Notes: a model not told the origin generated them from the letters alone. A stretch of DNA of 64,000 nucleotides from Klebsormidium nitens (GCA_000708835.1 DF237059.1:130944-194943); one strand, 5' to 3'. Shown: positions 7,894-62,484, counted from the stretch's first letter. Made by a program: numbers and translations.

Positions 7894-8538
7894 TCGACAC
7901 CCTGACTTGGTCGTACACTTTGTCATTTTTTTCGAATGTCTAGAGTTGTCAGGACCGTGGTTGTCTGTGCTCTACATGCTCGGATCCTTCTCATTGGGTC
8001 CGAATGGTGGATTGAAGGTATTCTAAATAATTGTGGTCAATCTTTGAGGCACCTGTGGACTATTCTTGGGGTATGCCTGGCCGTGGTCGCATCACATCAT
8101 AGTAACGCTGTGGCCTTCTAGGCTTCAGTAATGTCTTTGTCTCTGGAAATTGTTTATCAGGTGACAGCTTGTCACTTTGCCGAGAAGGTCTTTGAAAGCA
8201 ATCTGGAATCTATATATAAGCCCACCCTGCTTTCCAAGAAGCCCTCTTGAATGATTTCACCCATGAAGTTCTGTTTTCGCTCTGATGGAACCTAGCCTTT
8301 TTTGGGTTCCGAACACCTGCCCCTCCTGACATAGGAGCTTCTTCTTTTGGCACCCCTTTCCAAATGCCTACCTCACCTTCAAGCAATCCCTTCTTTCCGG
8401 TCCCCTTGGTAGAAGAAATTGTTTTTTTTTGGCACTCCTTCATATCATGGGGACTCCAACCTCCTACAACTCCTGGCGAAGAACATTCTTCTCCTCTGTC
8501 ATCACTTCACAGTGCCCATCTCTCCTCCAAGTAACTCA

Positions 8539-11500
8539 ATGTCTCAATCCTCTTGGCAACAGAATCTTGAGTCGTATGGGGACTCCAACCTCCTTCGCCT
8601 CCTGCCCGAAGAAGTCCTCCTGTCCGTCACCAGCCGCCTCGGCATCGCCGACCGCCTCCGCCTTGCCAGCACCTGCCGCAAGCTGTACCACATCAGCACG
8701 CTCCCGTCCGCATGGGCGTCCGTCGACCTGTCCGGAAGCGGCCCCGCCGTCGCCCGGATCTCGGACAAAGAGCTCTGGCGTCTAGTCAGGCGGTGCTGCG
8801 GAGGCGACGACGTCAGCAGGGGCGGTGCTGATGTCGGCCGGGAGAGAGATGACGTCGGCAGGGAGCCACCGCCCTTGAAGGGGCGCATCTGGCGTGATGA
8901 GGTGCTGAGGGAAGAGACGGTTGTTGCTCCACCGGGGAATGCAACCGGGGGGGCTGCGCAAGCAGGGGCCGGGCCCCCCGGGGGGATCATCCTGGCGTCG
9001 GTTAACCAGCTACGAACCCAACAGGGTCAGGAGCAAGCCCCAACGGTTTCAGCTGCCCCCCCCACGGGTGCGGTGGTCGATTCTACGTGGGGTTATGCGG
9101 GGGGAGTGGAAGAGAACAAGTCCCCGCTTGGAAGAGGGGACCCGCTTTCGATGTCAATTCCTCTTCGGTATTTGGACATCTCAGGTTGCAGTCAGATCTC
9201 GCGGGAGTGCCTAACGTCAATCATCGCGCATTCTGCGAGCAGTTTGCGGCAGGTTCGGGCGTCGGGGGCGTGTTTTCTGGACCGGAGGGGCGTGGATTTG
9301 ATTGTGCAGTATGGGATCCAAGCGGAGGTGGATGTGGAACTGACGGCGCCGAACAAGGTGGAGTGGCGCATGCTGCTGATGAACCTGAGGGGAGAACGGG
9401 ACCAGGGCCTTATCATTAAGCGGCTCCTACTGAAAGGTTCGATTTGTTTCTCGCCCTTGCGACCTCCTTTCCGACCATACTCCGTCTGTCTCGTGTGCGG
9501 ACCGTTTTCTGACCCTCCTGTTGCTTTTCTGGAAACGCCCGGTGGCACACTGTGTTCTTGGGCGGCAGGTCCTTTTCAGGTGTCTGTCTTTCTCCAACAT
9601 GCGCCTCGCAGAACTCGCTTGCCCGGACTACACCCAATTGCAATCGGCCTTTGCTTCCGTCTTTTTCGCACCTGCTTTTTCTGCCACTCCACCCTCGTCG
9701 TCCTCCCCGCAGACGCTCTCTGGCGCGCATTGACTCTCGCACCGCCAAGGTCTTTTTCAAGTGTCCGTTTTTCGCACCATACACCTCGCGAAGCATTGCA
9801 CCTCGACGGGAGTTGATTAGCGTCAGCCTTTTTTGCGGCTCTTCTGTGCCTCACTTTCTCATACCGCACCATCCTTCAGTTCGTTGCAGATGCTCCGCTG
9901 GCTCTCATCGACTCCCGGTCCGGGCAAAGCCTTTTCAAACGTCCTTTTCGCCACCATGCGCATCGCCGGAACGCGCGGTAGCACTCCCCATCTCGTGCCT
10001 CTCTCTTCTCACACCCCACCCTCACTACCCCTTTGCAGATGCTCCGCTGGCTCGCATTGACTCCCGCGCCGGCAAAGTCCTCTTCCAGATGTCCATTTTG
10101 CACAACATGCGCCTCACCGAACTCCACCTCGACCATTGCGTTCTGCGCCCGTCGGACGCGGTCACTGTGCTGGAAGCGGTTCAGCACAACGTGGGCTTGC
10201 ACACCCTACGCATTAGCAGTGAGTTTTCTTCTCGTCTTTCATCGCCTGGTGCTTGTTTGACCGAGCTTTCGGCTTGTTTCCTTGGTCTGAACTCCGAGGG
10301 AAAGATTCAGTCGCGTTGGTTAGCGGCAGTCAGCTGACGGAGGTCACCTTGCTTTGCTGAGAAGCGTTGACTCGCTCGACTTCTCGAACGACGGTAGGGG
10401 GCAGTCGAAAGGCGAAGACCCGCTGGCAGTGACATGTATATCGACGCCTAGAAGCCCAAAATTCTGGAGTGTATTTCATAGTGAGTACACTGACGTGCGA
10501 AAGGAGCAGGACTGCGACATGCGTTAGCGGCGAGCGGGATGATTTTAATAATTGACTTTGTCAACTTTCGTTACGCATCAGCGGAGATTTTTTTGGAGGA
10601 TGTCGCAGAGGAGTGCGCCCAATGTGGAAAAAGTACGACGAGATGCTCCAAACCCTGCATAATAGCAGTGGGCCTTACGTCATCTTCATAAACTCAAAAA
10701 CTGGGATTCTACTCCGAAGTTGCTCTCTTGCATTTGACGGGCTCAAAGGTGCGGAGAAAGTTGGTTCGAGAGTGCCGATAATAGCTGGACCAAAGGAAAC
10801 CGTTTGGATGACAACAAAAACTTGTTCCTGTGGCGCGCAGAAGCCCCGGAGGGCATCTTCGAACACGTACAGCCCGTGCGCGCCGCCTTGACGGCGATGT
10901 TGCAGGACAATTTCACCCTGCGGAGCTTGATCATTGAAGGTGAACTCCTTTCTTCCTACTGATTTCAGCAGGCAGCAATCTCCAAAACGTTTGAGGTAGT
11001 CAGCGGTGGGAAGAGGACTGTGTGCTGCGTGAGGCGTGGCGCTGCGTAAGTTGTGGCCTCTGTTCCGTTTTGCTAAGTCCCTTGCTGCAGCTGAAGCTTT
11101 TTGAGAAATTCTAAAGGGCTTCGGTGCATCATTGCCAGATCAGAAGCTTGTGTCCCGAAGCAGGAGTCGTTTTATAATCAAAATTGCCTTCATCGCCGAT
11201 TCCATTCGAGCGGCTGGTATGTGACTTGACCCTGAAAGTTACTTGGAAGATACTTGAAAGCACCGACATATTTGTGCGTTCTATCAATAAAGTGTTTGAC
11301 ATGACATGGGATCCGTACTTTATGTTCGGAGGTTGATGCCACGGTGTTGCTTGCAGATACTCGAGTAGACGAAGACTGCGTTGACGGAATCGTTCTTGGC
11401 GCCAGTGCCAATGGCGCGCTGACGAGCTTGGGGCTCAGTAGTAAGTTTGCGTCCCTTTGGTGCATTTCTTTTTGCGTTCTGCTGCGATTGGACGCTTTTG

Positions 11501-19036: not shown

Positions 19037-22000
19037 ATGGAGCGTCCGCTCATTGACAGCCGCCGCAGCTCGCCAGGTGGCAGTCGTTCAGCGGCTGCCA
19101 GGGACTCCCCTCCTAGCGCCCTCACCATCGATCGAAGAGGAAACGCATTCAAAACAGGCTCCAATGTGCAGCAAGCGGCTGCGCTGGTTGATATAGCCTA
19201 TGACGGCGAAGGGCTACCTGAGTCATTTCTTGAGAGCCCCCACTTTTCTGAGAAGGCGTCTTACTATCTCGTTTACAATGCTGCCGGGCCCTTGTGGCTC
19301 GCAACGTATGCGGCCCTGCTTCTGCTCAACTTTGTAGAGGTACCCTCTTGGTGCCTCAACAATCATGAGCAATATTGCGGGAATCCTAAAGAGTACTGGC
19401 TGGGCGACGTGCCATACCTTCCCCCCAACGTCTTCCTTGTCGTTGAGCTTGTCATTTTCCTACTCCTTGCGGCACACATCCTCTTTCCACTCCTATATGC
19501 TGGGCCCAAGCTCTATCAGGAGAGCCCCAAGGATGCCATCAGCACAGGGCTCTTACTGCTCCTGGGCTTAGACATCATCCGTCAGATGCTGTTCTGGTGG
19601 ACGCAATTTCCTGTAGTGGAACCGCAGGCAGTGAGACTCGCGCCGTACCTGCGTGTGTTGATCTTCCTGGTCTCGGTCAAAGAGATGCGGGACAATCTTT
19701 GGACGGTGGTGGCTGTCGTTCCTAAGTTCTTGGACATTTTCATCCTGGGTTTCGTCTTCCTGGTGTTCTCCTCGTGGCTGGCATATGTGCTCTTTGAGGA
19801 TACTCTTCAGGTAAGACCTCTGTCCTGTCTTGTCTCTATATCAAGTCATGAGTACACAAGTCTTGAGAAGACCGCCGAAGATCCTCCAGCATCATCAATC
19901 TTGAAACGTATATCAAGCTGATCCTGAAACAAGACGAGTGCAAGCAAGCCCAATGGCGCATCAAAGGAGTGATTTAGGCGTCCAAGTCCGCAGGGCACCT
20001 TCTGCCAGGGTTTGGAGGCGTTGGAAAACGTAGTCCATCCGCTATATTCAACTATTGTTGCAAAATTCTGTTGGTAATCCTAGTAGGATGATAAGAAAAC
20101 GGACAAGGGGCATGTCTACTTTTCATGAAGGCAAGTCCCAATTCTCCTGCAGGGGAGGAAGGAGTTCCCGACTTTTGGCATCACCTCCCTCAAGATGTTC
20201 ATCCTTCTCACGGGCTCAAATAACCCAGATGTCTGGCAAACGGCGTATGAGCAGCACCGCGCATACAGGTAAGTGTACTATTGGATCAAAGCAGAAATCA
20301 AAATGTGCATGATGAATGCTCGGAATTTTAAGAAGAGTCAGTGGATTGCAAGCATATGAGTGGTAACTGCACGCAGAATGTTGATTGCTTCTGACTGAGA
20401 ACTGGCAGGAACAACACCACCCAGGCTTGGCCTTACTGGATCAGGAGACTGACATTAGCTCCCCAGATTCTTTGCCTTGAATTGTCATCTCCTAATGCAC
20501 AACGAGGAGGGCCACATTGGCTTTATCTCTCACAATTATAAAAGGTGCAAACGCTGCTCACATATGGCCTTGACGCTACCCCTGCATTGAGGGGAACAAG
20601 AGATTTGAACCACGGCTTTTGATGTCAGCTTGATACACCTGACAGCAACTGGCGTCTTCTGTACTACAGGATGCATAGACTAATCCTCGGTGCATGATTT
20701 TTCTGAAAAATGCCGGTCCAGATCTGTCTTTCTGTAATTGCTAATCTATAATTGCGCATACAAGGCAAGCGATCGCATCAGATTTTCCTTTGTGAAGGTA
20801 TTCTCCTTAGGTGATTTCGTCGTCCAAGAGCGTGCCGTGAGAACAGAAGGTCTGTTTGAAATGACCAGTCTGGCTTCTTGGAGTAGGTTTAAGAGTTCTG
20901 CTTAGCCGAAACCCTTCACCTTTTCTTATGTTCCTTGGAGCAGATTATGGACCTCGAGCACTTGTCCCCCACACGCTTTCTTTGACCGCACCCTGTCAAG
21001 AACAGTCCTGCCAGAAGACCCTTTCTTGCATAGGCATCCCTTTCAAACCACATCACCTTGGAGCTCTCACGGGTTTTCTCACCTCACATTCGGCAGGCTC
21101 AAGAATGACTCACAGTCTTGGGCAAATTTGTCTGCAGTCTCTTCTTCGTCCTCTACCTCCTGTTGGGCCTTTACTTCCTTACGAACCTCACTCTTGCTGT
21201 CATCTTCGACAGGTGAGCTTCTTCGATTGTGTCCTATGAATGCTTGCTTCTTTGCGGATAACGCAAGAGGCTTGAGGGTAGCTGACAGAACTTTTTCCCA
21301 CTAGAAAACGAGCCTTGGAAGTCGTGACTTGTCTTCGCTAAGCGTTGCTCTTCTGCGTATGGTAAAGCAAAGCGGCTTGAGGTAGCTGAAAAGAGCGATT
21401 CTTCTGGGGCGTGTGAGAATAGCCCCTTCGACCTTCTTCGTCTGCCTCGCTTTAAGACGGTTTGTCTGGCCAGCTGAAGCGGAAGGTACGCCTTTCCTGA
21501 CGGATCATTGACGCTCAAGACTTGGAAGACCATAGAAGAGTTGGCTCTTGCAAGGATAAAAGTTGAGGACGACAGACTTTCAACAAGTCTTGCGCTCACT
21601 GTCACTTTAATATATATACCTTTCGAAATACAGGATCTGAAATGGACAAGCGTTCTGAAAACTGCTCTGGATGCCTCTGTTCGTGTCTGTCCTCCAGCTT
21701 CAAGAATCAGTTGGGCTACGCTCGCAAAGCCATTGAAGAGAACAAGCGTCGCGTGCTGTCCCGCGCCTTCTCGTTCGTCGACGAGCAAAAGCGGGGCTTC
21801 ATCGACAGGTCAGCACGACCGACTCGCGTTCTTAGGAACGGTTTCAGTAGCCGAGGGTCCGACTAGTGGTCGGAGCATGTGGTATCTTTCTTTGTTGCCA
21901 TGAAGAAGTCCATCGCAACTCGAAGCGCGACTCTCTATCAGTTGGTCCAATTATGTTACGGAGATGCAAGTGCTCACTGCGATTCTTGCTGTGTGTCTTG

Positions 22001-25000
22001 AAGGAACCAGCGAGTCACTCCACGTGATATATCTGCCATTCAACAGATTACTCAGCGATTTAACAACTGAATGTTCAGTTGCAGCGACCAGCTGATCGCG
22101 CGCCTGAACGCCCTCAACTATTACGGTGTTCTCTACTAAGAAATTGTTTTGGCGGCTTCTTTTCCCATTCACAGAATCAAAGAACCCAAGCTAACCTGAG
22201 TAACAGAATCCAACAAAAGCATTTATTTCCAGGTTGCAGCGACCAGCTGACCGCGGTGATGAACGCCCTCAGTCGTTCAATATTCCCTGTTGGAAAACCG
22301 AGTCGCTTGGCAAACTCCTTCCCCGAGCACAGTAACCCGACTTACCCAAACCTAACCTCAGTGACGGGAATCGAACAGAACCAGCCATTTTCCCGGTTGC
22401 AGCGACCAGCTGACTGCGCTATGAACGCCCTCAATCGCTGTTTTCTGTTCGGGGGACGAGTGTTTTGGTGGCTTCTTCCCCCCCTCGCAAAACCGATGGA
22501 ACCCAAGCTAACCTGAACACCAGAATCCAACACAATTCAACATCTCCCGGTTGCAGCGACCAGCTGACCGCTCTGATGAAATCGGCCGCTGTTCCCTGTT
22601 GAGTCACTTGGCAGATTCTATCCCCCAAGGACAAAAACCCGACTAACCAAATCTAACCTAAGTAACGGGACTCAAACAGAAGCTAACATTTCCCGATTGC
22701 AGCGACCAGCTGACTGCCTTAATGAACGCGCTCAACTTGTACCGGGCGGTGCCCCACATCGAGAAGGACGACATGCGCCACATCTTTTTGGCGCTGGACG
22801 ACTCGGGGGACTACAAGATCCAGGAAGACGAGTTCTCGGACGTCTGCGAGGCGATCGGGACCAAGTTTATTAAGCTGGACGAGCCGCCGTTTCTGCAGGT
22901 GCGAACCTTCTCGGATTGCAGTTTCCGGATTGTGAGTCTGGTATTAGCAGTTACTGTCGATCAAGCATAGTGTCTTTGTATCTAGATTTCGGTGATTTAT
23001 ATAAATTAAGTGATAGAGAGGGTTTTAGTGCCCTTGATGGGCAGCAAATCCTGGGCGTACCTTCCGAAGTATTTAATCTTTAGGCGAGCCTCAGAGGGTC
23101 TCGCCCTAATTGAGCCGCCGCTTCTGCAGGCGCGTGCCTTGGCTTTGGTTTGCTTTGCTTTTCTGGTTAAAGAAGGTTCTATTCCAGACGCTTACAAGGG
23201 TATGGGGAGCGTTTCACTGATCAGAGTCTTGTTGTCTGCTTTACCTTTTCAAAACCTAACCGGACCGCCCTCGAAGTTCAACTTCTGAGGCGGGCCTCAA
23301 ACTGTTCTTCATGCAATGCGCTTACGAGTGCTCTGCCTCTTCGTTCAGAATGGCGCTCGGGCATTCGTAAACCTCCTCAGCTAACGTGCGGGAAAAGTCG
23401 AAAAGCAAACACCCGTTTTGAGCAATGCACTCTTGCAATCAAAATTCTTTTCTCCCGGAAATACTACCACCAGCTTTCTCAAGTCAGTACAAGCCGCGTC
23501 ACCAGACCAGAAGTGCCGCGTTCGCCTCCATTTCTCGACCACTTACTCCCGTTGCAAAACATACCTGGAAACGTCATGCCGGAGACTAAACTAGAAAGCA
23601 TCGTGCACATTTTGACCTGCGTCTCTTCTTCCACTTCACCCTCTCTCAGATCGTGGCGCCCGGTGTCTTCAACAGCCGCGCCTTCACCGCGGTGCGGGAC
23701 TTTGTGAAGGACCCGCGCTTCGACCGGTACGTGATGACGTCAGTCCTGCTGGCCAATCTGGTGACTGTGGCCATCGAGACGACGCTCGACATGGAGAACC
23801 TGCCCTCGCAGGCCATCTGGCAGGTGGGAAACTCTTTCCGGATTCTGCGGGGATCCTGGTCTCGTGGCCATGCCGCTATACCCTCTAGGGGTTTCTTCTG
23901 TTCTCCCATTTTGTGTCCAACTCAGTCAGCCTTGAGGGATTCCCGTTGGGATGACTTTGTATTGCGTACCCTGCGCCTAGTGCTGGCGAGTCTCTGAGTG
24001 GACCTCAAACATGCATCTTCGCGCCCCAAGGACGTCTGCAAACGAGCTCGCAGACTCTTTTCTTTCCTTTGGACGCTCCCAAGACATACGGAGTGTATGT
24101 TGCTGCAACGGCCTCGATAATGGTCCTTCTTGGTTCGTCCTCTTCTGTCAAACCTGCACGGCAAATTCTAAGAAGACGGTCCTGCAGACACGCTGCCTAA
24201 GTCGGATAGACACAGCTTCTGACTAAGATAAAAGCAACAGATCTTCACGCAAGACTCTGATACTAAACCCTCAGTTGACACCCTATGAGGGTTGTCATAG
24301 GGTGACAACCCTATGACATGGAAATGAAACATGTCATTTCCATACCCCTTGGACCAGTAAGCCTTGACCTCTGCAAACAACGCAGACCTGTTGTGAACGC
24401 TCTACTCTAAGCCCTGAGACGTGACTTCCCGTTCTGACGAACTCTCAAAAGATCCGCTTGCCGAAAACGTCGCATTCGCAGTCGGGTGAGAACTTATACC
24501 GGTTGGAGGTGCCACTTTCTGATTTCTTAAAGTCTGCTTGCAATTTTGTACTCTGATCGTGGTGAGCCCTGAAATCAAGGTCCGACGCTGATTTATCCCT
24601 CAGTTTCTCAATGTTGGTTCAGAGCAGAGCACGCAAACGGGAAACCCAGACCTAAATGCGACCTCCGAAACCTCCCACGCAGAATATCGAGTACGTGTTT
24701 GGGTGGGTATACGTCCTGGAGGCGTTGCTCAAGGTCAGCGCGCTCGGCTTCTGCAACTACTGGCGGCAGGGCGCCAACCGCTTCGACTTTCTTATCACGT
24801 GGATCATCTTGATTGGTCAGACGGCGCTCATCCTAGACCCGCACCAGACTGTCGCTAGCAAGGTAAGGCGGTAGAGTCAAATTCAGGACGAAACACAGTC
24901 AGGTTGAGATAGGTCAGTGCATGGCTGTCGGATGGGGTTAACTTGCGAGTTAGAGTAGGTGACGGTGCGGAGCACGTAGATTTGTGTCTAGGGGTTTTGG

Positions 25001-26997
25001 TTTAGGTGCGTCCTCCCGGTAACAATGTGTATCTCAACCAGGCTCAAGTCTACCTGAACCGGAGACTTATCACGGTACAGGAGGGTTTCGTTCGTGATCG
25101 GTTTTTTTAATACAGAGGAAATGTCGATGTACGCAGGTTTTGGGTATCACATTACCGGCAACCTTTTGCGAGTCTTCCTCAAAGTTCCTTCATGTGTTTT
25201 CCCTATACTCTGTTGGCTTCGACTGAAACTTTATCAGGTCGTAGAAGGCTCTCTTTATTTCTCTTCCTTAACGTCAGCTCGCACGGCAAAAGGGGCTTGG
25301 AAGGAACTCGATGGTCCCGAAGAGGCCCCCAAGGTTCAGCGTCGGGACGTTCGCGGAACACTTGCTATGTACAGCAAGAGGCTTCAAGGCAGAAACTGCG
25401 GATTGCGCCCTTGCCGCAGCCTGATTGAAATGGGCTTTCAGTATTGGATGGCCAAAGCTCGAAGCTTGATCGTACCGCAAATCGGGAGTGCTACCGAACT
25501 GCGTGCTGTTGCAGCACGTTCAGAAGCGGCAACTTAGACTCGAGCTTACCAGATCTCAACGGTCGCACAAGTTGAGCGCTTCTCGCAAATAGCGGGCATG
25601 CTGCTGTCCGCTTTCAGATTTCATCAGAATTCTTGTCGGAAATGCTTTTTGGACCTTGGACACGGTTTTCATTGCAGGAGTGGATCCGTTACTTGCTGAT
25701 TGGGCGCATGCTGCGCCTCTTGCGGCTGCTGACGTACATCGAGCGCTACCGCGCGATCGTGAACACGTTCCTGAAACTCGTTCCCGCGATGGGGCCTCTC
25801 TTCGGGGTCCTGTTTGGTTTCCTCTCGCTCTTCACCAGGTGAGGTCCGACGGTCTCAAGTCCGCTCTCCCTTCTTGGCCTGGTGTGCTCTTAATGTTTCC
25901 GTCAACCATGCATCTTTGCTTCGTCCTTCACACTGCTGTCTCTTCTGCTCGCTACTGGATTCACATCCAGCGCGGCAGACTGATTCGTCAGTCAGCCTGT
26001 TGAGCTTCGCACCGCTCTCTGGTCTCGAAGTAGTTGTACTCACGAGCCGTTGCATAGAGTCCTCTTTGTAAACGTTCTCAATTCACCCTGGACCACCATA
26101 GTCTGCCCATGAGAACTTGGTTCAGGCTCCTTTTCGTCCAACTTTTCACAGCCTTCTAGTTTCGTTTCCACTCGCCTCGTTTTTGCTCCTTTGTCCAATA
26201 TCGCCTGACTTCTCTTCACACCCGCAGCCTCGGGATCCACCTTTTCGGGGGGTTGGTGTACGAGAGCAACCCCCTGCTGAAGTCGACCCCCCTGAGCGAC
26301 CACAAGCCGTACAACTTCAACGACTACTCCGCGGGCATGGTCACGCTCTTCAACCTGTTGTGCCAGGCCAGCTGGCAGGTGAGTGACGTAAGCAAGGGAT
26401 GTGATGCGAAGTTAATGGGAAGGGATATAACGTAAGGCTCACACTCCCATGTCGTAATCTGCTAACGGAGGCCAGCTGGCAGCTGAAAGATTTGGTGACG
26501 CTAGCTATGAGCGTAACGCAGTCTGTGATCCGGCTGGCGTTAGATGGCCTCGATCTCAAGGCTGGCTAAGCAGGCCAGTGGGCAGGTTATTGACGGGGTG
26601 AACCGGTCACAAGCGCACTCAAAGTGCAGTCCACGTTTGCTGACAATCTCACAATGGTCACCGTTTTTTCCAGGATTGGATGGAGGGTTACGCCGTTTTG
26701 AGCGGACACCGCGCGCTCGCCCGGGCGTTCTTCCTCACCTTCATTGCCCTGGGGACGTACCTGGTGATGAACGTCTTCGTCTCATTCGTCATGGAGGCGT
26801 TCACCGTTGAGATGGAACTAGCGGCGGCGGAGAAAAAGGAGGAGGCGTGGCGGAGCGGGGGGCGGTTGAACCTGAGCGTTGCGCGCCATGGGGCTAATGT
26901 TAGGCCGGAATCGAGCCCCATGGAACGGTTGATGGATAAGATGTTTGGGGAGGGGGAGGGAGACGAGGATAAGGATAGCGCTGACCCAGGAGTGTGA
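19037..26997 (+). CDS. TPC1: Two-pore cation channel (plant TPC1 family, divergent filters), about 750 aa; exons 19037-19810, 20153-20268, 21138-21212, 21698-21808, 22703-22898, 23650-23823, 24683-24862, 25678-25838, 26228-26378, 26674-26997
   Basis: Colinear with Arabidopsis TPC1 motifs as I recall them: QAAALVDIAYDG.GLP, RLAPYLRVLIF, FEDT, NNPDVW, EF-linker DDSGDYKIQEDE, ETTLD, GANRFDFLITW, EWIRYLLIGRMLRLLRLL, NFNDY..GMVTLFNLL, FVMEAF. All nine introns are GT-AG and phase-consistent. The symbol denotes family membership; orthology to TPC1 versus the second plant TPC type is not established. Confidence 0.93.
22079..22740 (+). repeat. Intronic tandem array of about 155-bp units, each ending in a copy of the TPC exon-5 acceptor and exon start
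   Basis: ttgcagcgaccagctga occurs at 22079, 22234, 22397, 22551 and 22697 (the real acceptor). Confidence 0.9.
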
Positions 26998-27938
26998 ATA
27001 CGGGTCATGAATGTAAAGATAAGTTTTTTTGGAGAGGCTGACGATGCCCGTCAGCGTTTATTCGCATAGTACTTCAGGTTCGCCCGCAAGTCAGCAGTCA
27101 TTGTGAGCTGCACTCACTTTGTAGTATAAACCAAAGCGCGCGCAATCAGTTGCTGAGGAAGATATAGTACGCGTCAGCTGTTGCAGCTGAGCTCGATGGG
27201 CGTTGCAGAGCTTTTCTTAGCATAAAGTCACGAAGCGGTAAGTACTATTCAGTAAGGTGGATTTGGATGGCTGCATATGACCTCCCTGGAGCTATATCAT
27301 TTTGAGACCCCATGCGCACGTGTAATCAGGTAATGCTCTTCTTTGGGTCACTTTTGGAAAAGCCTAGCTGCCTCCGATTGAGTGAGCTTGATCGAATCTG
27401 GAGATTCGCAGTGGTCTGTGTCGGACTCTACATATGGGGCCACTATGGTAACTTGTCATGGATATATGATGATTAAATCATGCAAACGATTCGAACAGTG
27501 TCGTCATGAAGATGTGATCTGATTATGTGTTGCACATATGTTGAAAGACCTATAAGTTCTGAACATGATAATTGGCGGCATAAGTCGACATAATAGTAAT
27601 CGAGACATCTTCACATGCGGGCCCGTCTAGTTCAGACACTAGAATTGACTGTCTGTGATTGCAGCGCCACCAATGACGAGGCGGCCAGCTGCCATGGTAT
27701 GAGCAACGGCTCGTCAGTGAGGAGTCGCTGGCGGGGCTCGACCAGCAAACAAGCTAGAGCAGTCTTGGACATGTCCCGATCGAGCTCAAGAATACTGACA
27801 GCAAATCGTGATCTGCTGGATATTTCAGCTGCACAAAGTCAAGCAGATGAATAGCAGTTTGTCTCGAATATTGTAGATCACATAGAAGCAGCTGAAGAAT
27901 GCATGCTAACGCCGTTGACCATCTACCTATGTGTTCGA

Positions 27939-45379: not shown

Positions 45380-47185
45380 CTATTTCACCTGTTCATAGTT
45401 CAGAGCAATGTACCCGGCTTTCCGCTTTCCGTTGGTCTTTCTCAACTCGTCAATTAGTCGGTTCCAATTCGATCCCAACACACCTACAAAGAAATCAGCA
45501 TCCGCGGCCAAAAATAGATTGACAAACGCCAAGTCCGACCCCGCTCTGGCCGGCGTGTGCGTCTTCCAAGGATCCTTTTCATTAGAATGGATCCGCTCTG
45601 CCTTTGTATAGTACAAACTCCAGTGAGGCGTATACTTGCTTACAGCCTGATCTAGTATATCTTGAGACTCGGTACTCAACCAGATCGACCGCACCGCTGG
45701 ATTATGCTGCCGAATCCTCTCCGCTTGCGCCATAAAGTCAGGCAAGTCCACAATCCGCATCTCGACACTCTTCTCATAAGCGTGCCGCACATGCACGCTT
45801 ATGAAAGGCCGCGGCATAAACACGTCATCCTTCCACAACTCCTGCTCCAATGCTCCAGAACGCCGGGGATCCCCAGCTTCTTCCGGCGCATGCTCGCCCT
45901 GAAAACGTATGCTCTCCGCCAGCCCTGCCGCGACCTCCACCCCAAAGGCATCGTGCCTCGCGCCGTTCATCAGTCTGCACAGGTACGCGCTCGGAGCCCT
46001 GAGCAGATACCGCGTCGCCTGGGCCCTCCACCAATTCATGGGGCCATATATCTGTGCCCCGTAGTTGAATGGGCCAACTGTTTCGTCCACTATCTTCCCC
46101 TCAAACTCAATCGAGCCCCGTTCCAGCTTCCAGGGCTCCCCCCACAAGTCTGGCACTATGTCCATAAGCGTGTGATCCATCAATGCATATTCGGGGAGTA
46201 AAACCACCCGCTCTTCCAGACCCTGCGCCGCTGCCATGAGATCCGCAGTAGATCCTGGCCTGTGCCGCTTTCCCGCGAGCGCGATCGCCGCGCACTCCTT
46301 CGATGTCGCCGGCAGGACGTAGCAGTCCAGCGTCCCGTTGCTTTCACCCGCACACCCCTCGTGCATTGCGCGCTCGAAGCTGTTGTCGACCACAAACACC
46401 CGGCCCGTCATGACCGCCAGCGCAAACCCCCCGGTTATCACATGTAACTGGGACCCTAACCCATGGGTCGATGTGTCTACCCATTGCGCCACCAGAAAGC
46501 GGACGTCCGACGCGTTGCAGTCTTGCGGATGCTGCCGCAGCCACAGGTCTTGCTGAACGTGCCTGGTTAGGGGAATGTTGTCCACGTCAGCGCCCCTAAC
46601 CCAAAACGGGTCAGGAACCGGGTGTCCCGCAAACCCTTTCTGGTCTGCCCAGTCAGGAAGGCCCCCGTCAGGTAGCCTGCTGTCTTGGCTTAGCTCCTCT
46701 TGAGACACACGGTCGCAGTCTACCAAATGCGGGGGCAACGGTGGCCCCTTCTCCGCCGTCTGCGCTTCGCTTCCCGTGCCAACCTTGCCGTCAAAGAAGC
46801 GCGAGCTGTTCCACGCTTGGAGGAGCGCCTTCACAGCAGGACAGGCGTCTAACTGCTCCGCTGTCCACTCTTTTCCCGACCAGGTGCAACTGAAGGGAAC
46901 CGCTGGAGCGGTCACATTTGGAACAGGGGGGCAGGGTTTGCAGGGCTTCTCTCCCATCAACTCTGCCCCCCCAAGGGCTGGAGCCGCCATCACATTTGCA
47001 ACAGGGGGGCAGGGCTTGCTGTGCTCCTCCCTCATGATATGTACCCCCACTAGAGCAGGAAAGGAGGTGACCAGCAGAAAGTGGTCGCTGGCTTTGTCGC
47101 CCCAGAAGATAGCCGCAGGGACCAGAAGGAAGAAGCTGACGCTGAAGGAGAAGAGGACCCAGAAGCGGGAGCAAGGGGACGCCAT
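45380..47185 (-). CDS. Intronless type-II membrane glycosyltransferase, GT23-like (alpha-1,6-fucosyltransferase FUT8/NodZ fold), 601 aa
   Basis: N-terminal signal anchor (RFWVLFSFSVSFFLLVPAAIFWG) and a Pro/Cys stem with the KPCPPV.NV.APA repeat. GLGSQLHVI...LAV.TGR.F.V resembles FUT8 G.GCQLHH. FISVHVRHAYEK (motif I), IWLSTES (motif II) and NLFLAADADFFVGVLGSNWNRLIDELR (motif III) are present. Confidence 0.8.
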   Translation of the reverse strand: MASPCSRFWVLFSFSVSFFLLVPAAIFWGDKASDHFLLVTSFPALVGVHIMREEHSKPCPPVANVMAAPALGGAELMGEKPCKPCPPVPNVTAPAVPFSCTWSGKEWTAEQLDACPAVKALLQAWNSSRFFDGKVGTGSEAQTAEKGPPLPPHLVDCDRVSQEELSQDSRLPDGGLPDWADQKGFAGHPVPDPFWVRGADVDNIPLTRHVQQDLWLRQHPQDCNASDVRFLVAQWVDTSTHGLGSQLHVITGGFALAVMTGRVFVVDNSFERAMHEGCAGESNGTLDCYVLPATSKECAAIALAGKRHRPGSTADLMAAAQGLEERVVLLPEYALMDHTLMDIVPDLWGEPWKLERGSIEFEGKIVDETVGPFNYGAQIYGPMNWWRAQATRYLLRAPSAYLCRLMNGARHDAFGVEVAAGLAESIRFQGEHAPEEAGDPRRSGALEQELWKDDVFMPRPFISVHVRHAYEKSVEMRIVDLPDFMAQAERIRQHNPAVRSIWLSTESQDILDQAVSKYTPHWSLYYTKAERIHSNEKDPWKTHTPARAGSDLAFVNLFLAADADFFVGVLGSNWNRLIDELRKTNGKRKAGYIALNYEQVK

Positions 47186-48859: not shown

Positions 48860-51800
48860 ATGGCGCTCTCGCAAGTCAGCGCCGGCATGTGCAACCCTTT
48901 GCTGCACTTTCCGGCCCTGACGACCTCTCCATTTGTTGGGCCAACGTTTGTTTTGTATGCATCACATTGCTCACCCGCAAGCAGCACTTGCAGAGCAATT
49001 ACCAGGAGTCGCCCTCAACGGGTTTACTCATCAGTGGCCTTTGGGTTGACACCAGCGCCCTTGCTAGAATCCTCTCTCTGTGGTGGTACTTTCAATTCCA
49101 GGCGTCGTTCTTCTCAGCGTCGTTTGCGCACCCGATTATACGTTCACAATTCCAAAAGTGCAGCGGTCAGTGCCGAAAAAGTTGGTGAGAGGCAATGCAG
49201 CGCAATCAGAGTGGAACAGGTCGTTGACGCGAGTGAGCATGATGACGTCAGCAAGGGGCGGAGGATGGGACGGAGAAATGTATTGGAATTGGCGGCGCTG
49301 ACGATTTTGGTGGGCAACGCAGCGATCGGTGCGTCGCCGGCGCACGCATACAAGCCTCCGCCAGAAGGTGAGGTCCGACAGGATTAATTGGAGACGTAGA
49401 GGGAGGGAAGACGGGAAGTTAGCCATGACATTCACGTTTCATTGTTTGCATTCTTGCTGGCGGACAAAGAGTTGGGCGTTGAAGGAAGGCTTGCTCAAGC
49501 AGCTTTCAGCAAGAGGGTACTCGGTGAGCGATGCAGCGAACGCATATTACTTTAGGTCCGATACTCTGGAGTTTTTCCAACCGCGAGCCCTGCAAGCTGA
49601 CCGCCAAGCTGCACCACCCCTGATTGCCGTGGCGCAACTCTTATGGCAGTCATTTCCATCATGAGGGTTCTGACCACATTCGGGCTTTGCCGAGGGATGA
49701 ACAATCCATGTCCGAGGTTCTCTCTGAACGCTGGGATTGCTGTTTAGACAGCCCGTTGAGTGTAGAAAGTTGTGGGGAGTGATACTGCAGTTACGCCCCA
49801 GAGTGGATCAAAATTGTCTGGAGATGAGCTTCCGGCAGTCACGTTCTCCTGCTTGCTTTCTGCAACAGCAATGCTTTTATAGACTCTGATGACGAGCGTA
49901 CTCTGTTCAAGGATTTCAGTTGCTAGAGAGCAGCCTTAGAGACCTGGACTATTGAATCTATGCTGTCACCCTCAGAAAGCACAGTGGCAGAGGAAACGAA
50001 AGTCGGCAGTTTTTGCATACCACTTGATCCCTCCTGAATGCTGAGGTCGCATGACAAAGCAGGCACTATTCTTCCATTATCTTGGTGTCTTCATGTTCGA
50101 AACTGCCTGAAAGCAGGCTGCTTATCTACGGCCACTCCCGTTGAGAAGCCTGGATCCTGCCGGAGTAGTGAGCTCCTTGAGAGCGGTGTTGAGGCACTTC
50201 TTGCAGTGTCTCACAGTTACAACCGCAATTTGGGGCAACGCCTTCTCTGATACTTTGCTGCGGCAATCGTGAAGCGTTTGGGGCTCCGCTCATTGTCGCT
50301 TGAAATCCGGTTAATTTCTTGACTTATTATCTGCTTCAAATCCTGTTAATCTTTGACTGCATAAGGACTCGCATGGAGTGCCTAGCAAGCAGTCGACCAA
50401 TCCCACTCGTTTTGACGGATAACGATTCTTGTTTCGTACTAACCGGTTCATGTCGTGGGGTTCGGGAAATGATTTCCCTGTGCCTAAGCATTGTCATGGG
50501 ATCGTTTGATCCGGTTCCGTTGATGCACGAAACTCCTGGGAGATTCCAGTTGCTTTATCCCCTAACACCCTATCGAGCCCAGTGCGTCTTTGGATCTCAG
50601 ACTGTCAAAGCCAGCATCGTCACGCTAGTAAGGCCAAGTCCTGAGGGCGGCTTGTAGTTGCCAAGAATGAATCATCCGAATAGATCGAACTCTTTTGATC
50701 CCGTTCAATCGTCAGGTGCAAATTGCAAGGTGCACTTAGCCACAGTTGTATGAACATTGTCGTTGCTCCCAATGTTCAGGTTTCCGCCGGTACACCGACC
50801 GCCTCGACGGGTTCACCCTCCTCGTTCCCGACTACTGGGTCCAGGTCCGGGGGAGCGGCGCTGAGGTGCAGTTCCGCAGCCCCCAGAACGGCGATGAGAA
50901 TCTTTTCGTTGCGGTTAGCTCGCCGAGTTCTTCAAAATACACCGGGGTTAAGGATTTGGGTTCGCCAGAGGAGAGTGGGAAGTTCATCAAGAAGCAGTAC
51001 GTGGCGGAATACATGTCGACGCGGATAGGCGTGCGGCGGACGGCGGAGGTCGTGAGCGCGAGCAGTAGAGAAGTGGAGGTGAGGCACCAAAAGCTTCTGA
51101 TCGTCTTCTGCTTCATTTTCCTTTCCCTTTGTGCCGCTTTGATCGCATGCTACTTTTGCGGTGGCGATTGTTGTGGTTTCTGCTTTCTTTGCGATTCGCT
51201 TTTATTCTGTTCTCTGTTTCTGCCACCCTTCTCTCAACTTTCGTTGGGTGCTTATACACCGCCTGCTTTACGCCTCGTAGCAGTTACAACAGACCATCTC
51301 TTCACCTGTTTATTTTTGTCGTTCACCCCGAGGCTCGTTCTTTCGTGCGTCCACCTTGGAAAGGTGGGACGTGTTTTGTCGTCTCCTTCTTTCGGCATCC
51401 CCTCTTGAAACTTTGCACAAAAGCCGCGTCGACTGGAAACTTTTGGTGGACACGAATGGCATCTGGAATGCAATATATGACTCTTGGGCTTACCTATTCC
51501 TGTTCCAACTCTTCCAGCCCTCCCTTCTTATGTGTACATCGTCATGACGATCCATGGCACAACACGCACTAAAGCTTGCTCTATTTAAAGATATTTCCTT
51601 GCCTCTTTTTGCAGGAGGGGAAGCCGTACTACCAGATTGAGATGAGCGTCAAGTCAGAGGCGAACTCGAACCAACTGGCGGTCACCCCCGAAGAGAGGGT
51701 GCCCTTCGTCGAGTGGGAGAGGAGATACATCACGGTTCAGGCGGTCGAAAATAAGCGACTATACGAGTTGCGGGTGCAAATACCGGCTGATATCTATGGG

Positions 51801-61800: not shown

Positions 61801-62484
61801 ACTCAGCTGCCTTTCAAGCACTTGACTAACGTCCTGTGCCTCGCTCTTACTGGCTACCGCCTCTTCTGTCAGCATCAGATCTGCCACAGCCTTCTTCCTT
61901 GAGCTCAAGGGTGATCTGCAGCCCTTCTTGCTACTTGTAGCTGACCTTTCTCCCAATATCACCATGCCCGCAACAGCATTGGCAACCTGACGGCCGTTCC
62001 TGATGTTGAATGGGAAGGGCGCCAAAAAAGGGCTTCCGACGTCTGTGGTAACCCCGCACCCTGATTTGACATATTTTAGGGTTTCGCTCTCTTCTTCCGA
62101 AAATTCTTGCCCTGGCAAACGGGTCTCTGGGCTCCTGGACCCAGCAGAACGAGAGCTGAGAAGTGCGCTTCCGTGTTGCCTAAGTACGCCCTTGATCCGT
62201 TGATGATTGATGCGCAGGCCATCATTCTTGCTGCCTGACAAGGAAGGACCAAAACCAGCATTGGCAAGATCAGCACAGTGGCCGTCAGTGATTTGCATCA
62301 GCGGACTGCGGTTCCAAGAGGTCCCAGTATAGGTCAGGGCCTTAAGGGCCTTGGCCCTACCCTTGATAATGGAACTCTTACAACCGAAATGTGGAAGGTG
62401 ATGGCTCTGATCAGACACGAGGCTTGCGGACGGAAAGGGCGTACCACGATGCAAAGAGAGGTGGTGTGAGAGTATGGCGTCCAT
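52893..62484 (-). CDS. P-type pentatricopeptide repeat protein with plastid transit peptide; N-terminal repeats resemble MRL1; exons about 62484-61560, 60706-60459, 59992-59826, 59423-59050, 58410-58086, (gap)57312-57071, 56554-56402, 55663-55569, 55213-54964, 54597-54319, 53911-53817, 53352-52893
   Basis: More than 15 PPR motifs, e.g. DYTCVINACARARNVDSAIEVLEIMKERGV, LWNALLEACKESGQFQRGYELFEEMQASG, VYSALLNACAKAGKVDYAF, TFMPLIDVCGRVGKLDRALSLLAEMKNRGL, SFAALLGACAVRADSEQAFKLWRYMWENGIEP. Acidic C-terminal tail. The end of exon 1 and one acceptor (in the gap) are uncertain. Confidence 0.9.
57313..57390. other. Assembly gap (78 N) flanked on both sides by ctagaaaggcgcg
   Basis: Run of n. The identical 13-mer on both sides indicates that a local tandem repeat broke the assembly. 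Confidence 0.97.
61215..61470. repeat. Intronic tandem duplication, period about 137 bp, in PPR intron 1
   Basis: gaagaccttcgatggtagtggtggttgaacggggataagccaactc...aagccctgcttgaaaactcaagtaggtccctttgaa at 61226 recurs with substitutions at 61363. Confidence 0.85.

What the first reader, a model, noticed from the sequence alone, without database searches (positions are those of the whole stretch)
19037..26997. Two-pore channel with non-canonical selectivity filters in both pore loops
Seen: pore 1 is LLTGSNNPDVW (codons at 20210-20221) and pore 2 is LFNLLCQASWQDW (26361-26378). Established: Arabidopsis TPC1 has FTTSNNPDVW and LLVMGNWQVW, animal TPC2 has TTANN and VVNNW, and filter-II residues set Na+ versus Ca2+/K+ selectivity. 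Loss of the near-invariant filter-II Asn (N to S) and G to A is unusual. Meanwhile the domain-II S4 arginines (RMLRLLR), the EF2 loop (DDSGDYKIQEDE) and the equivalents of the luminal Ca2+-site acids (FED, TTLD, EWIRY) are retained. The acidic outer-pore EDD cluster is largely replaced (PLSDHKPY). Inference: a voltage/Ca2+-gated channel with altered ion selectivity or conductance, possibly of the second TPC type described in bryophytes and algae.
Basis: partly seen in the sequence, partly recalled or inferred. Interest (0 to 1): 0.72.

Follow-up and report, generated by a model that had tools for sequence, protein, structure and literature searches.

The report
Algal two-pore channel, unusual filter
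An intact, expressed gene of a Klebsormidium-type green alga encodes a plant-type vacuolar two-pore cation channel whose ion-selecting loop reads C-Q-A-S instead of the usual V-M-G-N. The variant is real and conserved in a relative, but it is a lineage-specific form of the ordinary TPC1 type, not the second bryophyte type, and its effect on ion selectivity is untested.

Summary
Window 19037-26997 (+) is a 10-exon, 753-aa two-pore channel gene. Seven of its nine splice junctions, including 26378|26674 that builds LFNLLCQASWQ|DWMEGY, appear in RNA contigs of four runs from four studies.

By alignment to AtTPC1, C-Q-A-S replaces V628-M629-G630-N631, and G replaces T264 in filter I. These are retained:
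- the EF-hand residue D376;
- the VSD2 arginines R531, R537, R540 and R543;
- luminal site 1 (D240, D454, E528).

E457 is N. The E605-D606-D607 pore mouth keeps one acid and is two residues shorter.

The gene is under purifying selection (dN/dS 0.12-0.16). CQAS recurs in a metatranscript 78% identical (dS about 1.2). Klebsormidium nitens KFL_003120080 (84% identical) instead has SEAD, a derived state on a faster branch. Whether that gene is an orthologue or a same-genome paralogue is unsettled.

Trees place the gene in a Klebsormidium-specific clade on the TPC1 side of the TPC1/TPC1b split, so the "second type" reading is not supported. N631 substitutions (S, D or A) also occur in several land-plant TPC1s.

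Verdict: a real, lineage-specific filter variant of a known channel family. Its permeation properties remain to be measured.

The parts
19037..19810 (+). Exon 1 (aa 1-258): N-terminus with an E-R-P-L-I dileucine-type motif, S1-S5 of domain I, and FED (E239/D240 equivalents) at 19793-19801
   Evidence: ATG at 19037 and GT at 19811. phmmer to AtTPC1 gives E = 1.6e-45. Pfam Ion_trans.
20153..20268 (+). Exon 2: pore loop I. Filter I T-G-S-N-N-P-D-V-W lies at 20210-20236.
   Evidence: G aligns to AtTPC1 T264. The same TGSNN is found in K. nitens, L006 and L001.
21138..21212 (+). Exon 3: S6 of domain I
   Evidence: The loose end at 21135 carries the end of exon 2. Junction 21212|21698 is seen in 4 runs.
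21698..21808 (+). Exon 4: linker helix and the first part of the EF-hand 1 loop (DEQKRGFID, 21780-21806)
   Evidence: Junctions; model. Pfam EF-hand_7/EF-hand_6 hits on the near-identical L006 and P0133 proteins.
22703..22898 (+). Exon 5: rest of EF-hand 1 and all of EF-hand 2. Loop DDSGDYKIQEDE lies at 22797-22832 (D376 equivalent kept).
   Evidence: Junctions. phmmer alignment to AtTPC1 348-406. Weak Pfam EF-hand_6 hit on the exon alone.
23650..23823 (+). Exon 6: S7 and the luminal S7-S8 loop. ETTLDMEN lies at 23776-23799 (D454 and E456 kept, E457 is N).
24683..24862 (+). Exon 7: S8-S9 of voltage sensor 2
   Evidence: Pfam Ion_trans, E = 1.5e-9.
25678..25838 (+). Exon 8: S10 voltage-sensing helix and the S10-S11 linker. 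EWIRYLLIGRMLRLLR lies at 25678-25725 (E528, R531, R537, R540 and R543 kept).
26228..26378 (+). Exon 9: S11 end, luminal pore mouth PLSDHKPY (26289-26312), pore helix, and filter II C-Q-A-S-W-Q (26361-26378)
   Evidence: No differing letters in the RNA contigs.
26674..26997 (+). Exon 10: DWMEGY..., second pore helix, S12, C-terminal helix (ERLMDKMF), stop codon at 26995-26997
   Evidence: Junction 26378|26674 in 4 runs. Model. Pfam Ion_trans C-terminal part.

Best explanation
This is a functional, expressed member of the plant TPC1 (slow-vacuolar channel) family. It belongs to a Klebsormidium-specific group of TPC genes. By homology it is a dimeric endomembrane, probably tonoplast, cation channel. 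It should be opened by depolarisation through voltage sensor 2 and by cytosolic Ca2+ through its EF-hands. Its pore carries a lineage-specific selectivity filter: T-G-S-N in loop I and C-Q-A-S in loop II. That filter is kept by selection. Because the central filter-II residue is a small Ala (Gly in AtTPC1, Asn in Na+-selective animal TPCs), I expect a wide, poorly selective cation pore like the SV channel. Because only one of the three pore-mouth acids (E605/D606/D607) remains and E457 is Asn, I expect weaker block by luminal Ca2+ and easier opening, as in Vicia faba TPC1. Shown here: gene structure, expression, conservation, residue equivalences and family placement. Inferred: localisation, gating, permeation and luminal Ca2+ sensitivity.
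For: Identity:
- Exon-wise phmmer hits to AtTPC1 structures with E from 1.6e-45 to 9e-6.
- Pfam Ion_trans on exons 1, 7, 8 and 10 (two Ion_trans stretches in the full-length relatives L006 and P0133), plus EF-hands.
- An AlphaFold model of the 78%-identical CQAS-type protein L006 (pLDDT 82, pTM 0.83) matches AtTPC1 7fhk at TM 0.80/0.90. Q-A-S sits in the coil between the two pore helices.

Expression and splicing:
- Seven junctions appear in RNA contigs of 4 runs from 4 studies. 20 runs from 7 studies hold the stretch.

Selection:
- dN/dS is 0.16 against K. nitens KFL_003120080 and 0.12 against L006.
- CQAS is identical in L006 at dS about 1.2.

Functional residues kept: D376, E528, R531/R537/R540/R543, D454, E239/D240.

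Phylogeny: the gene lies inside the streptophyte TPC1-side clade (99/98 under LG+C20, 91/91 under LG+G4).

Literature:
- M629 and G630 abolish Na+ selectivity in plant TPC1 (PMC8892357).
- Asn653 makes the Na+-selective constriction in HsTPC2, and plants have Gly there (PMC6424560).
- Neutral residues at E457, E605 and D606 make VfTPC1 hyperexcitable and weakly Ca2+-blocked (PMC10665017).
- An N-terminal dileucine motif targets TPCs to the tonoplast, and the C-terminal helix is needed for activity (PMC4894940).
Against: No electrophysiology or localisation exists for any Klebsormidium TPC that I could find. All four filter-II positions and T264 differ from AtTPC1, so permeation could differ more than I assume. 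In my sample of 202 proteins the combination occurs only in this group. The placement of the Klebsormidium clade is not fully resolved: a tree with all five Klebsormidium-type sequences next to the TPC1b-like clade is not rejected (AU p = 0.13). The exon 1 to exon 2 junction was not seen in reads. The structure model is of a relative and is a monomer, so pore geometry was not measured.
Confidence: 0.6

Rival explanations
1. The filter changes re-tune ion selectivity, and the filter is an evolving selectivity switch in this lineage. CQAS (neutral) and SEAD (two carboxylates per subunit, in K. nitens KFL_003120080) would then be functionally different channels, for example one poorly and one strongly Ca2+-binding or Ca2+-permeable. 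If both genes sit in one genome they would be sub- or neo-functionalised paralogues.
For: With L006 as outgroup (tree 100/99), CQAS is ancestral and SEAD is derived. The KFL_003120080 branch carries 63 unique replacements against 18 on the window branch (p = 5e-7). Three of them fall in the four filter residues (hypergeometric p = 0.002), and one more is E456R beside luminal site 2. Exon 9 is otherwise 45/46 identical. There is no synteny within 10 kb either side of KFL_003120080. RNA contigs of a much-sequenced organism match the window at 100% even in introns. Other agents' notes call this genome K. nitens. These last points fit a same-genome paralogue.
Against: No functional data exist. The clustering test uses only three sequences. 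I could not show that both genes lie in one genome. Single substitutions at these positions are tolerated in land-plant TPC1s, so changes here need not alter function much.
Confidence: 0.25
2. The gene belongs to the second plant TPC type (TPC1b / type 2 of mosses and liverworts).
For: Type 2 is said to predate land plants (my recollection of Hashimoto et al. 2022, a paper I could not read). Filters in that clade also differ from TPC1. A tree joining all five Klebsormidium-type sequences to the TPC1b-like clade is not rejected (AU p = 0.13).
Against: In the best trees the TPC1b-like clade (which includes the Riccia protein) lies outside the group formed by Klebsormidium, P0006 and embryophyte TPC1. 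Joining the window group alone to that clade gives AU p = 0.041. Joining it to the divergent P0006 gives p = 0.0025. The window protein keeps canonical EF-hand loops and SNNPDVW / WQDWM motifs of the TPC1 kind. The TPC1b-like proteins have TTANNPNVW / VNNW-Y and mostly no Pfam EF-hand, as described for TPC1b in PMC9783492.
Confidence: 0.07
3. The odd filter is an artefact or a sign of decay: an assembly error, a mis-called exon, or a gene under relaxed constraint.
For: One low-depth contig of run X20 has a 1-base deletion at 26287. The intron after exon 9 holds a 14-base copy of the exon's end, which could have suggested alternative splicing.
Against: Contigs from four independent runs agree letter for letter with the window across exon 9 and its junction. 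The open reading frame is intact. dN/dS is 0.12-0.16. CQAS is conserved at dS about 1.2. The intron copy is followed by CT, not GT.
Confidence: 0.03

Closest known systems
Arabidopsis thaliana TPC1 (SV channel; PDB 5E1J, 5DQQ, 7FHK)
   Same: Same architecture: two 6-TM domains, an EF-hand pair in the linker and a C-terminal helix. About 43-45% identity between this gene's group and land-plant TPC1. Same VSD2 charges, D376, luminal site 1 and SNNPDVW. The fold of the close relative L006 matches at TM 0.80/0.90.
   Different: Filter II is C-Q-A-S instead of V628-M629-G630-N631. Filter I has G for T264. E457 is N. The pore-mouth E605-D606-D607 is reduced to one Asp and the loop is two residues shorter.
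Klebsormidium nitens KFL_003120080 (P0133, hypothetical protein, uncharacterised)
   Same: 84% identical. Identical 10-exon structure with equal exon sizes except the last. Same TGSNN filter I and the same PLSDHKPY pore mouth.
   Different: Filter II is S-E-A-D, which adds two acidic residues. E456 is R. Its branch is 3.5 times faster. Introns are unalignable and flanking genes differ. Whether it is an orthologue or a paralogue is not settled.
Vicia faba TPC1 (hyperexcitable natural variant, PMC10665017)
   Same: Neutral residue at the E457 position and loss of acidic residues at the luminal pore entrance (site 3).
   Different: VfTPC1 keeps the canonical filter. Here the pore-mouth loop is also shortened and the filter is changed. 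The functional parallel is an inference.
TPC1b / type-2 TPCs of mosses and liverworts (PpTPC1b, MpTPC2/3; PMC9783492)
   Same: Also streptophyte TPC paralogues whose key motifs differ from TPC1 and which have no assigned current.
   Different: They form a separate clade in my trees, have degenerate EF-hands, and have filters TTANNPNVW / C(I/V)VN(N/K)W. This gene keeps its EF-hands and lies on the TPC1 side.
Human TPC2 (PDB 6NQ0; PMC6424560)
   Same: Same fold family. Filter II decides selectivity.
   Different: HsTPC2 has V652-N653-N654, with Asn653 forming the Na+-selective constriction, and it has no functional EF-hands. This gene has Ala at that position.

Membership tests
Plant TPC1 family (two-pore channel 1 / SV channel) | One chain with two Shaker-like 6-TM Ion_trans domains | tested here: met
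   Pfam Ion_trans hits on exon 1 (domain I) and on exons 7, 8 and 10 (domain II). Two Ion_trans stretches in the full-length relatives L006 and P0133. Full-length alignment to TPC1 proteins.
Plant TPC1 family (two-pore channel 1 / SV channel) | Pair of EF-hands in the cytosolic linker, with the activating EF2 residue D376 | tested here: met
   The DDSGDYKIQEDE loop aligns to AtTPC1 376-387. Pfam EF-hand_6/7 hits on L006 and P0133, and a weak hit on the exon alone.
Plant TPC1 family (two-pore channel 1 / SV channel) | Functional voltage sensor 2: S10 arginines R537, R540 and R543 (plus R531) | tested here: met
   EWIRYLLIGRMLRLLR aligns to AtTPC1 528-543 with all four Arg kept.
Plant TPC1 family (two-pore channel 1 / SV channel) | Luminal inhibitory Ca2+ sites: site 1 (D240/D454/E528), site 2 (E239/D240/E457), site 3 (E605/D606/D607) | tested here: inconclusive
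   Site 1 is complete. Site 2 lacks E457 (Asn). Site 3 keeps one acid of three in a loop two residues shorter. Site definitions are from PMC10665017.
Plant TPC1 family (two-pore channel 1 / SV channel) | Canonical filters T-T-S-N (loop I) and V-M-G-N (loop II) | tested here: not met
   The filters read T-G-S-N and C-Q-A-S. In 202 streptophyte sequences, about 187 have N at the 631 position, and TGSNN occurs only in the Klebsormidium group. The filter motif is typical of the family rather than definitional: land-plant TPC1s also vary here.
Plant TPC1 family (two-pore channel 1 / SV channel) | Phylogenetic position with TPC1 rather than TPC1b or non-plant TPCs | tested here: met
   The clade of Klebsormidium group, P0006 and embryophyte TPC1 has support 99/98 (LG+C20) and 91/91 (LG+G4). 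Strict sisterhood of the window group to embryophyte TPC1 is not rejected (AU p = 0.098). The best tree instead makes a Klebsormidium-specific clade with two divergent K. nitens paralogues (94/94 and 86/92).
Plant TPC1 family (two-pore channel 1 / SV channel) | TPC fold | tested here: met
   AlphaFold model of the 78%-identical L006 protein: pLDDT 82.4, pTM 0.83. Best PDB matches are AtTPC1 chains, at TM 0.69-0.80 by the model and 0.79-0.92 by the chain. The window protein itself could not be folded, because a spliced sequence has no reference.
Plant TPC1 family (two-pore channel 1 / SV channel) | Slow vacuolar, depolarisation- and Ca2+-activated non-selective cation current at the tonoplast | not testable with these tools
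   Needs patch clamp and localisation. Only indirect evidence is available: an N-terminal E-R-P-L-I motif like the AtTPC1 dileucine motif, and a C-terminal helix (PMC4894940).
TPC1b / type-2 plant TPC | Membership of the separate bryophyte clade | tested here: not met
   The clade holding Riccia fluitans KAL2634744.1 lies outside in both trees. AU p = 0.041 for joining the window group to it. Caveat: I had no named MpTPC2/3 or PpTPC1b sequences, so the identity of that clade rests on its liverwort member, the matching filter motif of moss-metagenome loci, and its missing EF-hands.
TPC1b / type-2 plant TPC | Degenerate EF-hands (not recognised by domain prediction; PMC9783492) | tested here: not met
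   EF-hands are recognised in this group. They are not recognised in P0035, P0026 or P0022.

The most novel reading that the evidence does not exclude
Klebsormidium carries two young TPC1-type genes in one genome. This one is absent from the public K. nitens proteome and keeps the ancestral neutral C-Q-A-S filter. The other, KFL_003120080, has rapidly acquired an acidic S-E-A-D filter and an altered luminal sensor. That would be a natural selectivity switch, in which one copy is a Ca2+-preferring or Ca2+-blocked vacuolar channel and the other a monovalent cation channel. It would give a direct handle on the long-argued question of whether plant TPCs release Ca2+.
Probability: 0.15. Interest if true: 0.75.

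Novelty: new variant of a known kind. Interest (0 to 1): 0.45.

Why it matters
Filter II is the part of two-pore channels that sets Na+, K+ and Ca2+ discrimination. Reviews describe plant TPC1 as structurally very conservative from charophytes to angiosperms (PMC9783492). This gene shows that an early-diverging streptophyte lineage keeps, under selection, a TPC1-type channel in which every filter-II residue differs. A close relative or paralogue has exchanged that filter for an acidic one. Together with the land-plant N631 variants seen in passing (lettuce, chicory, dandelion, a fern), this gives a ready-made natural mutant series for testing how the plant TPC filter and pore mouth set selectivity and luminal Ca2+ block. 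It also matters for annotation: TPC phylogenies built on the public K. nitens proteome would not contain this protein.

Tried and rejected
- The full-length window protein could not be handed to the search, fold or look-up tools, because a spliced sequence has no reference and I did not type it. I used exon pieces, and I used P0133 and L006 as proxies. The spliced protein was handled only inside scripts.
- I first took P0006 (public run assemblies SRR8128902-4; filters QSQNS / TEGN) for the TPC1b representative. Its intact EF-hands and its position as sister of embryophyte TPC1 argue against that. The Riccia-containing clade fits better.
- The third word search, with an alignment of P0006 and the two divergent K. 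nitens paralogues, returned only 8 proteins and no named type-2 sequences.
- The supplement of PMC9783492 holds no full TPC1b sequences.
- Hashimoto et al. 2022, Guo et al. 2016 and Kintzer & Stroud 2016 are not held.
- Attempts to fix the organism and assembly gave nothing. Exact look-ups of three long window ORFs and of the exon-1 read-through ORF found nothing. tblastx of the K. nitens flanks against the window found nothing.
- Tandem Repeats Finder and Rfam found nothing in 18-28 kb.
- I did not run complex prediction. A dimer is expected by homology, and a pass would not change my odds.


Full report
**What is in the sequence.**
The window is eukaryotic DNA of about 51% G+C. On the + strand, 19037-26997 holds a 10-exon gene:
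- 19037-19810
- 20153-20268
- 21138-21212
- 21698-21808
- 22703-22898
- 23650-23823
- 24683-24862
- 25678-25838
- 26228-26378
- 26674-26997

Every intron is GT..AG, and the spliced frame gives 753 aa. 20210-20221 is T-G-S-N inside FILLTGSNNPDVW. 26361-26378 is C-Q-A-S-W-Q, followed by GTGAGT.

**Transcript evidence.**
Twenty public runs from seven studies hold the 3' part of the gene. I laid four of them, from four studies and two coded organism names, on 21050-27049 (6,000 letters). Their contigs show seven junctions, each GT..AG and each seen in all four runs:
- 21212|21698
- 21808|22703
- 22898|23650
- 23823|24683
- 24862|25678
- 25838|26228
- 26378|26674

A loose end at 21135 carries the end of exon 2. 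There are no differing letters anywhere, and unspliced contigs match the introns exactly. So LFNLLCQASWQ|DWMEGY is what the mRNA encodes. The refuting outcome 'cDNA shows a different exon 9' did not occur, although contigs can hide rare isoforms. The exon 1 to exon 2 junction was outside the stretch laid. It is supported by the identical exon sizes of the K. nitens gene and by the continuous ORF of transcript L006.

**What it is.**
Exon 1 alone hits AtTPC1 structures at E = 1.6e-45, and the other exons hit only TPC1. Pfam finds Ion_trans on both halves and EF-hands in the linker.

Residue equivalences, from those alignments in AtTPC1 numbering:

| Feature | State in this protein |
|---|---|
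| Filter I | T263-G(T264)-S265-N266-N267-P-D269 |
| Filter II | C(V628)-Q(M629)-A(G630)-S(N631)-W632 |
| EF2 | D376 kept |
| Luminal site 1 | D240, D454 and E528 kept |
| Luminal site 2 | E239 and D240 kept, E457 is N |
| Luminal site 3 (E605-D606-D607) | one Asp left, loop two residues shorter |
| VSD2 | R531, R537, R540 and R543 kept |

The N-terminus (M-E-R-P-L-I) resembles the AtTPC1 dileucine signal, and a C-terminal helix is present (roles per PMC4894940).

I could not fold the window protein itself, because it has no single reference. An AlphaFold model of the 78%-identical CQAS-type protein L006 has pLDDT 82 and pTM 0.83. It puts Q-A-S in the coil between the two pore helices and matches AtTPC1 at TM 0.80/0.90.

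**Relatives and conservation.**
- The nearest named protein is K. nitens KFL_003120080 (P0133, 84% identity). Its locus has the same ten exons, but its introns are unalignable and its neighbouring genes are different.
- A JGI metatranscript (L006, 755 aa, 78% identity) and a genomic contig from a public run assembly (L001, exons 1-3) are further relatives.
- Filter I is TGSNN in all four.
- Filter II is CQASW in the window, CQASF in L006 and SEADW in KFL_003120080.
- dN/dS is 0.12-0.16. dS is 0.55 to KFL_003120080 and about 1.2 to L006. The gene is therefore constrained, and CQAS has been kept over a long time.
- The tree (L006,(window,KFL_003120080)) has 100/99 support, which makes CQAS ancestral and SEAD derived.
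- The KFL_003120080 branch has 63 unique replacements against 18 on the window branch (p = 5e-7). Three of the four filter residues (p = 0.002) and E456R are among them.

**Orthologue or paralogue.**
This is not settled.

For a same-genome paralogue:
- RNA contigs of a heavily sequenced organism match the window at 100%, introns included.
- Notes of other agents treat this genome as annotated K. nitens.
- There is no microsynteny.
- The divergence of the two copies is asymmetric.

Against it, or neutral:
- The window protein is absent from the public K. nitens proteome in both searches that should have found it.
- Exact look-ups gave nothing.

I lean about 60% towards a paralogue.

**Type 1 or type 2.**
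K. nitens has two more, much more divergent TPCs (P0291 and P0296; filters TGSNV/TAQNL and NGTLY/NSSLF). These group with the window pair in a Klebsormidium-specific clade (94/94 and 86/92).

That clade, a divergent protein from public run assemblies (P0006) and embryophyte TPC1 together form a clade (99/98 under LG+C20, 91/91 under LG+G4). It excludes a group that contains Riccia fluitans KAL2634744.1 and three unnamed proteins from public run assemblies. That group has filters TTANNPNVW / C(I/V)VN(N/K)W, which the moss-metagenome loci L007-L013 also carry, and mostly no Pfam EF-hand. These are the properties reported for TPC1b (PMC9783492), and I take it for TPC1b/type 2.

AU tests:

| Grouping forced | p (AU) |
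|---|---|
| Window group with P0006 | 0.0025 |
| Window group with the TPC1b-like clade | 0.041 |
| All five Klebsormidium-type sequences with the TPC1b-like clade | 0.13 |
| Window group with embryophyte TPC1 | 0.098 |

So the 'second type' reading is not supported, though deep placement is not fully fixed.

**How unusual the filter is.**
Among 202 streptophyte TPC1-family proteins, about 187 have N at the 631 position. The exceptions are:
- S in Ceratopteris, Cichorium and Lactuca;
- A in Taraxacum and one protein from a public run assembly;
- D in a liverwort-clade protein from a public run assembly, in a Rhododendron 1B protein and in KFL_003120080.

Q at position 629 occurs in an Apiaceae paralogue group. 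N at position 630 occurs in 26 sequences. Single changes therefore have precedent. The full C-Q-A-S set and T264G are confined to the Klebsormidium group in this sample.

**Mechanism.**
According to PMC8892357 and PMC6424560, plant TPC1 is non-selective because M629 and G630 replace the Val-Asn of animal TPCs, whose central Asn forms the Na+-selective constriction. [quoted passage not shown] With Ala at the central position, an Asn constriction is impossible. I therefore expect a wide, poorly selective cation pore, lined slightly differently by Q and S.

By analogy with VfTPC1 (N458/A607/N608; PMC10665017) and with the E605/D606 mutants (PMC8892357), the neutral 457 position and the depleted, shortened pore mouth predict weaker luminal Ca2+ block and easier voltage activation. 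All of this is inference. No recordings exist for any Klebsormidium TPC in the literature I could search.

**Verdict.**
The assignment to the second TPC type is not supported, and the Asn loss is less exceptional than stated. This is a new variant of a known kind, of moderate interest. Its main value is as part of a natural filter series (VMGN, VMGS, CQAS, SEAD) for testing TPC selectivity.

Noticed in passing
window 22071-22742 (intron 4 and start of exon 5): Intron 4 holds four decaying copies, spaced 146-163 bases apart, of the exon-5 acceptor and its first ~30-45 coding bases (TTGCAG|CGACCAGCTGAC...). Only the last copy (exon start 22703) is used in the RNA contigs of 4 runs. The K. nitens paralogue/orthologue has a 275-base intron here with no such array. 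This matches the earlier notes s1-273895 and s1-267523.
   Followed up: partly
window 26469-26482 (intron 9): A 14-base exact copy (AGGCCAGCTGGCAG) of the last bases of exon 9, which are the A-S-W-Q filter codons, lies 104 bases downstream in the intron. Zero such copies are expected by chance. It is followed by CT, so it is not a donor site, and it is not used in the contigs.
   Followed up: partly
L002:10001-17320 (K. nitens DF237261.1, KFL_003120080): This annotated K. nitens TPC has an acidic filter II (S-E-A-D-W) and R at the E456 position. It evolves about 3.5 times faster than the window gene. Its flanking genes (a hydrolase and an amine-oxidase/kinase) are absent from the 64 kb window.
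   Followed up: partly
proteins P0255 (Ceratopteris), P0268 (Cichorium), P0275 (Lactuca), P0232 (Taraxacum), P0151 (Rhododendron), P0325, P0174: Several land-plant TPC1 proteins lack the filter-II Asn631. They read VMGSW, VLGAW, VMGAW, VMGDW or VMNDW. Cichorieae (lettuce, chicory, dandelion) seem to share the loss. I saw no mention of this in the papers I read.
   Followed up: no
L007-L013 (JGI moss-associated and other metagenome contigs); proteins P0017, P0022, P0026, P0035: A separate TPC clade with filters LLTTANNPNVW and LC(I/V)VN(N/K)W and mostly no recognisable EF-hand includes a Riccia fluitans protein. It is probably the TPC1b/type-2 group. Its filter II looks like the animal V-N-N type.
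   Followed up: partly
L003-L005 (public run assemblies SRR8128902-4), protein P0006: A 750-aa streptophyte TPC with intact EF-hands but very odd filters (LLQSQNSPDEW and VLVTEGNATW) sits as a long-branched sister of embryophyte TPC1. Its organism is unknown to me.
   Followed up: no
window 26287: One low-depth contig (depth 6.5) of run X20 lacks one base here, inside exon 9. The other three runs, and a deeper X20 contig nearby, do not show it. It is probably an assembly error.
   Followed up: no
window 8419-9816 (+), 45380-47185 (-), 48860-49387 (+), 56255-62484 (-): Other coding-looking ORFs in the window: an F-box protein, a 601-aa ORF with a faint FUT8-like fucosyltransferase hit, a PsbQ-like fragment, and a run of ORFs on the minus strand, one of which has a PPR-repeat hit. 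None was found by exact look-up in the protein collection.
   Followed up: no
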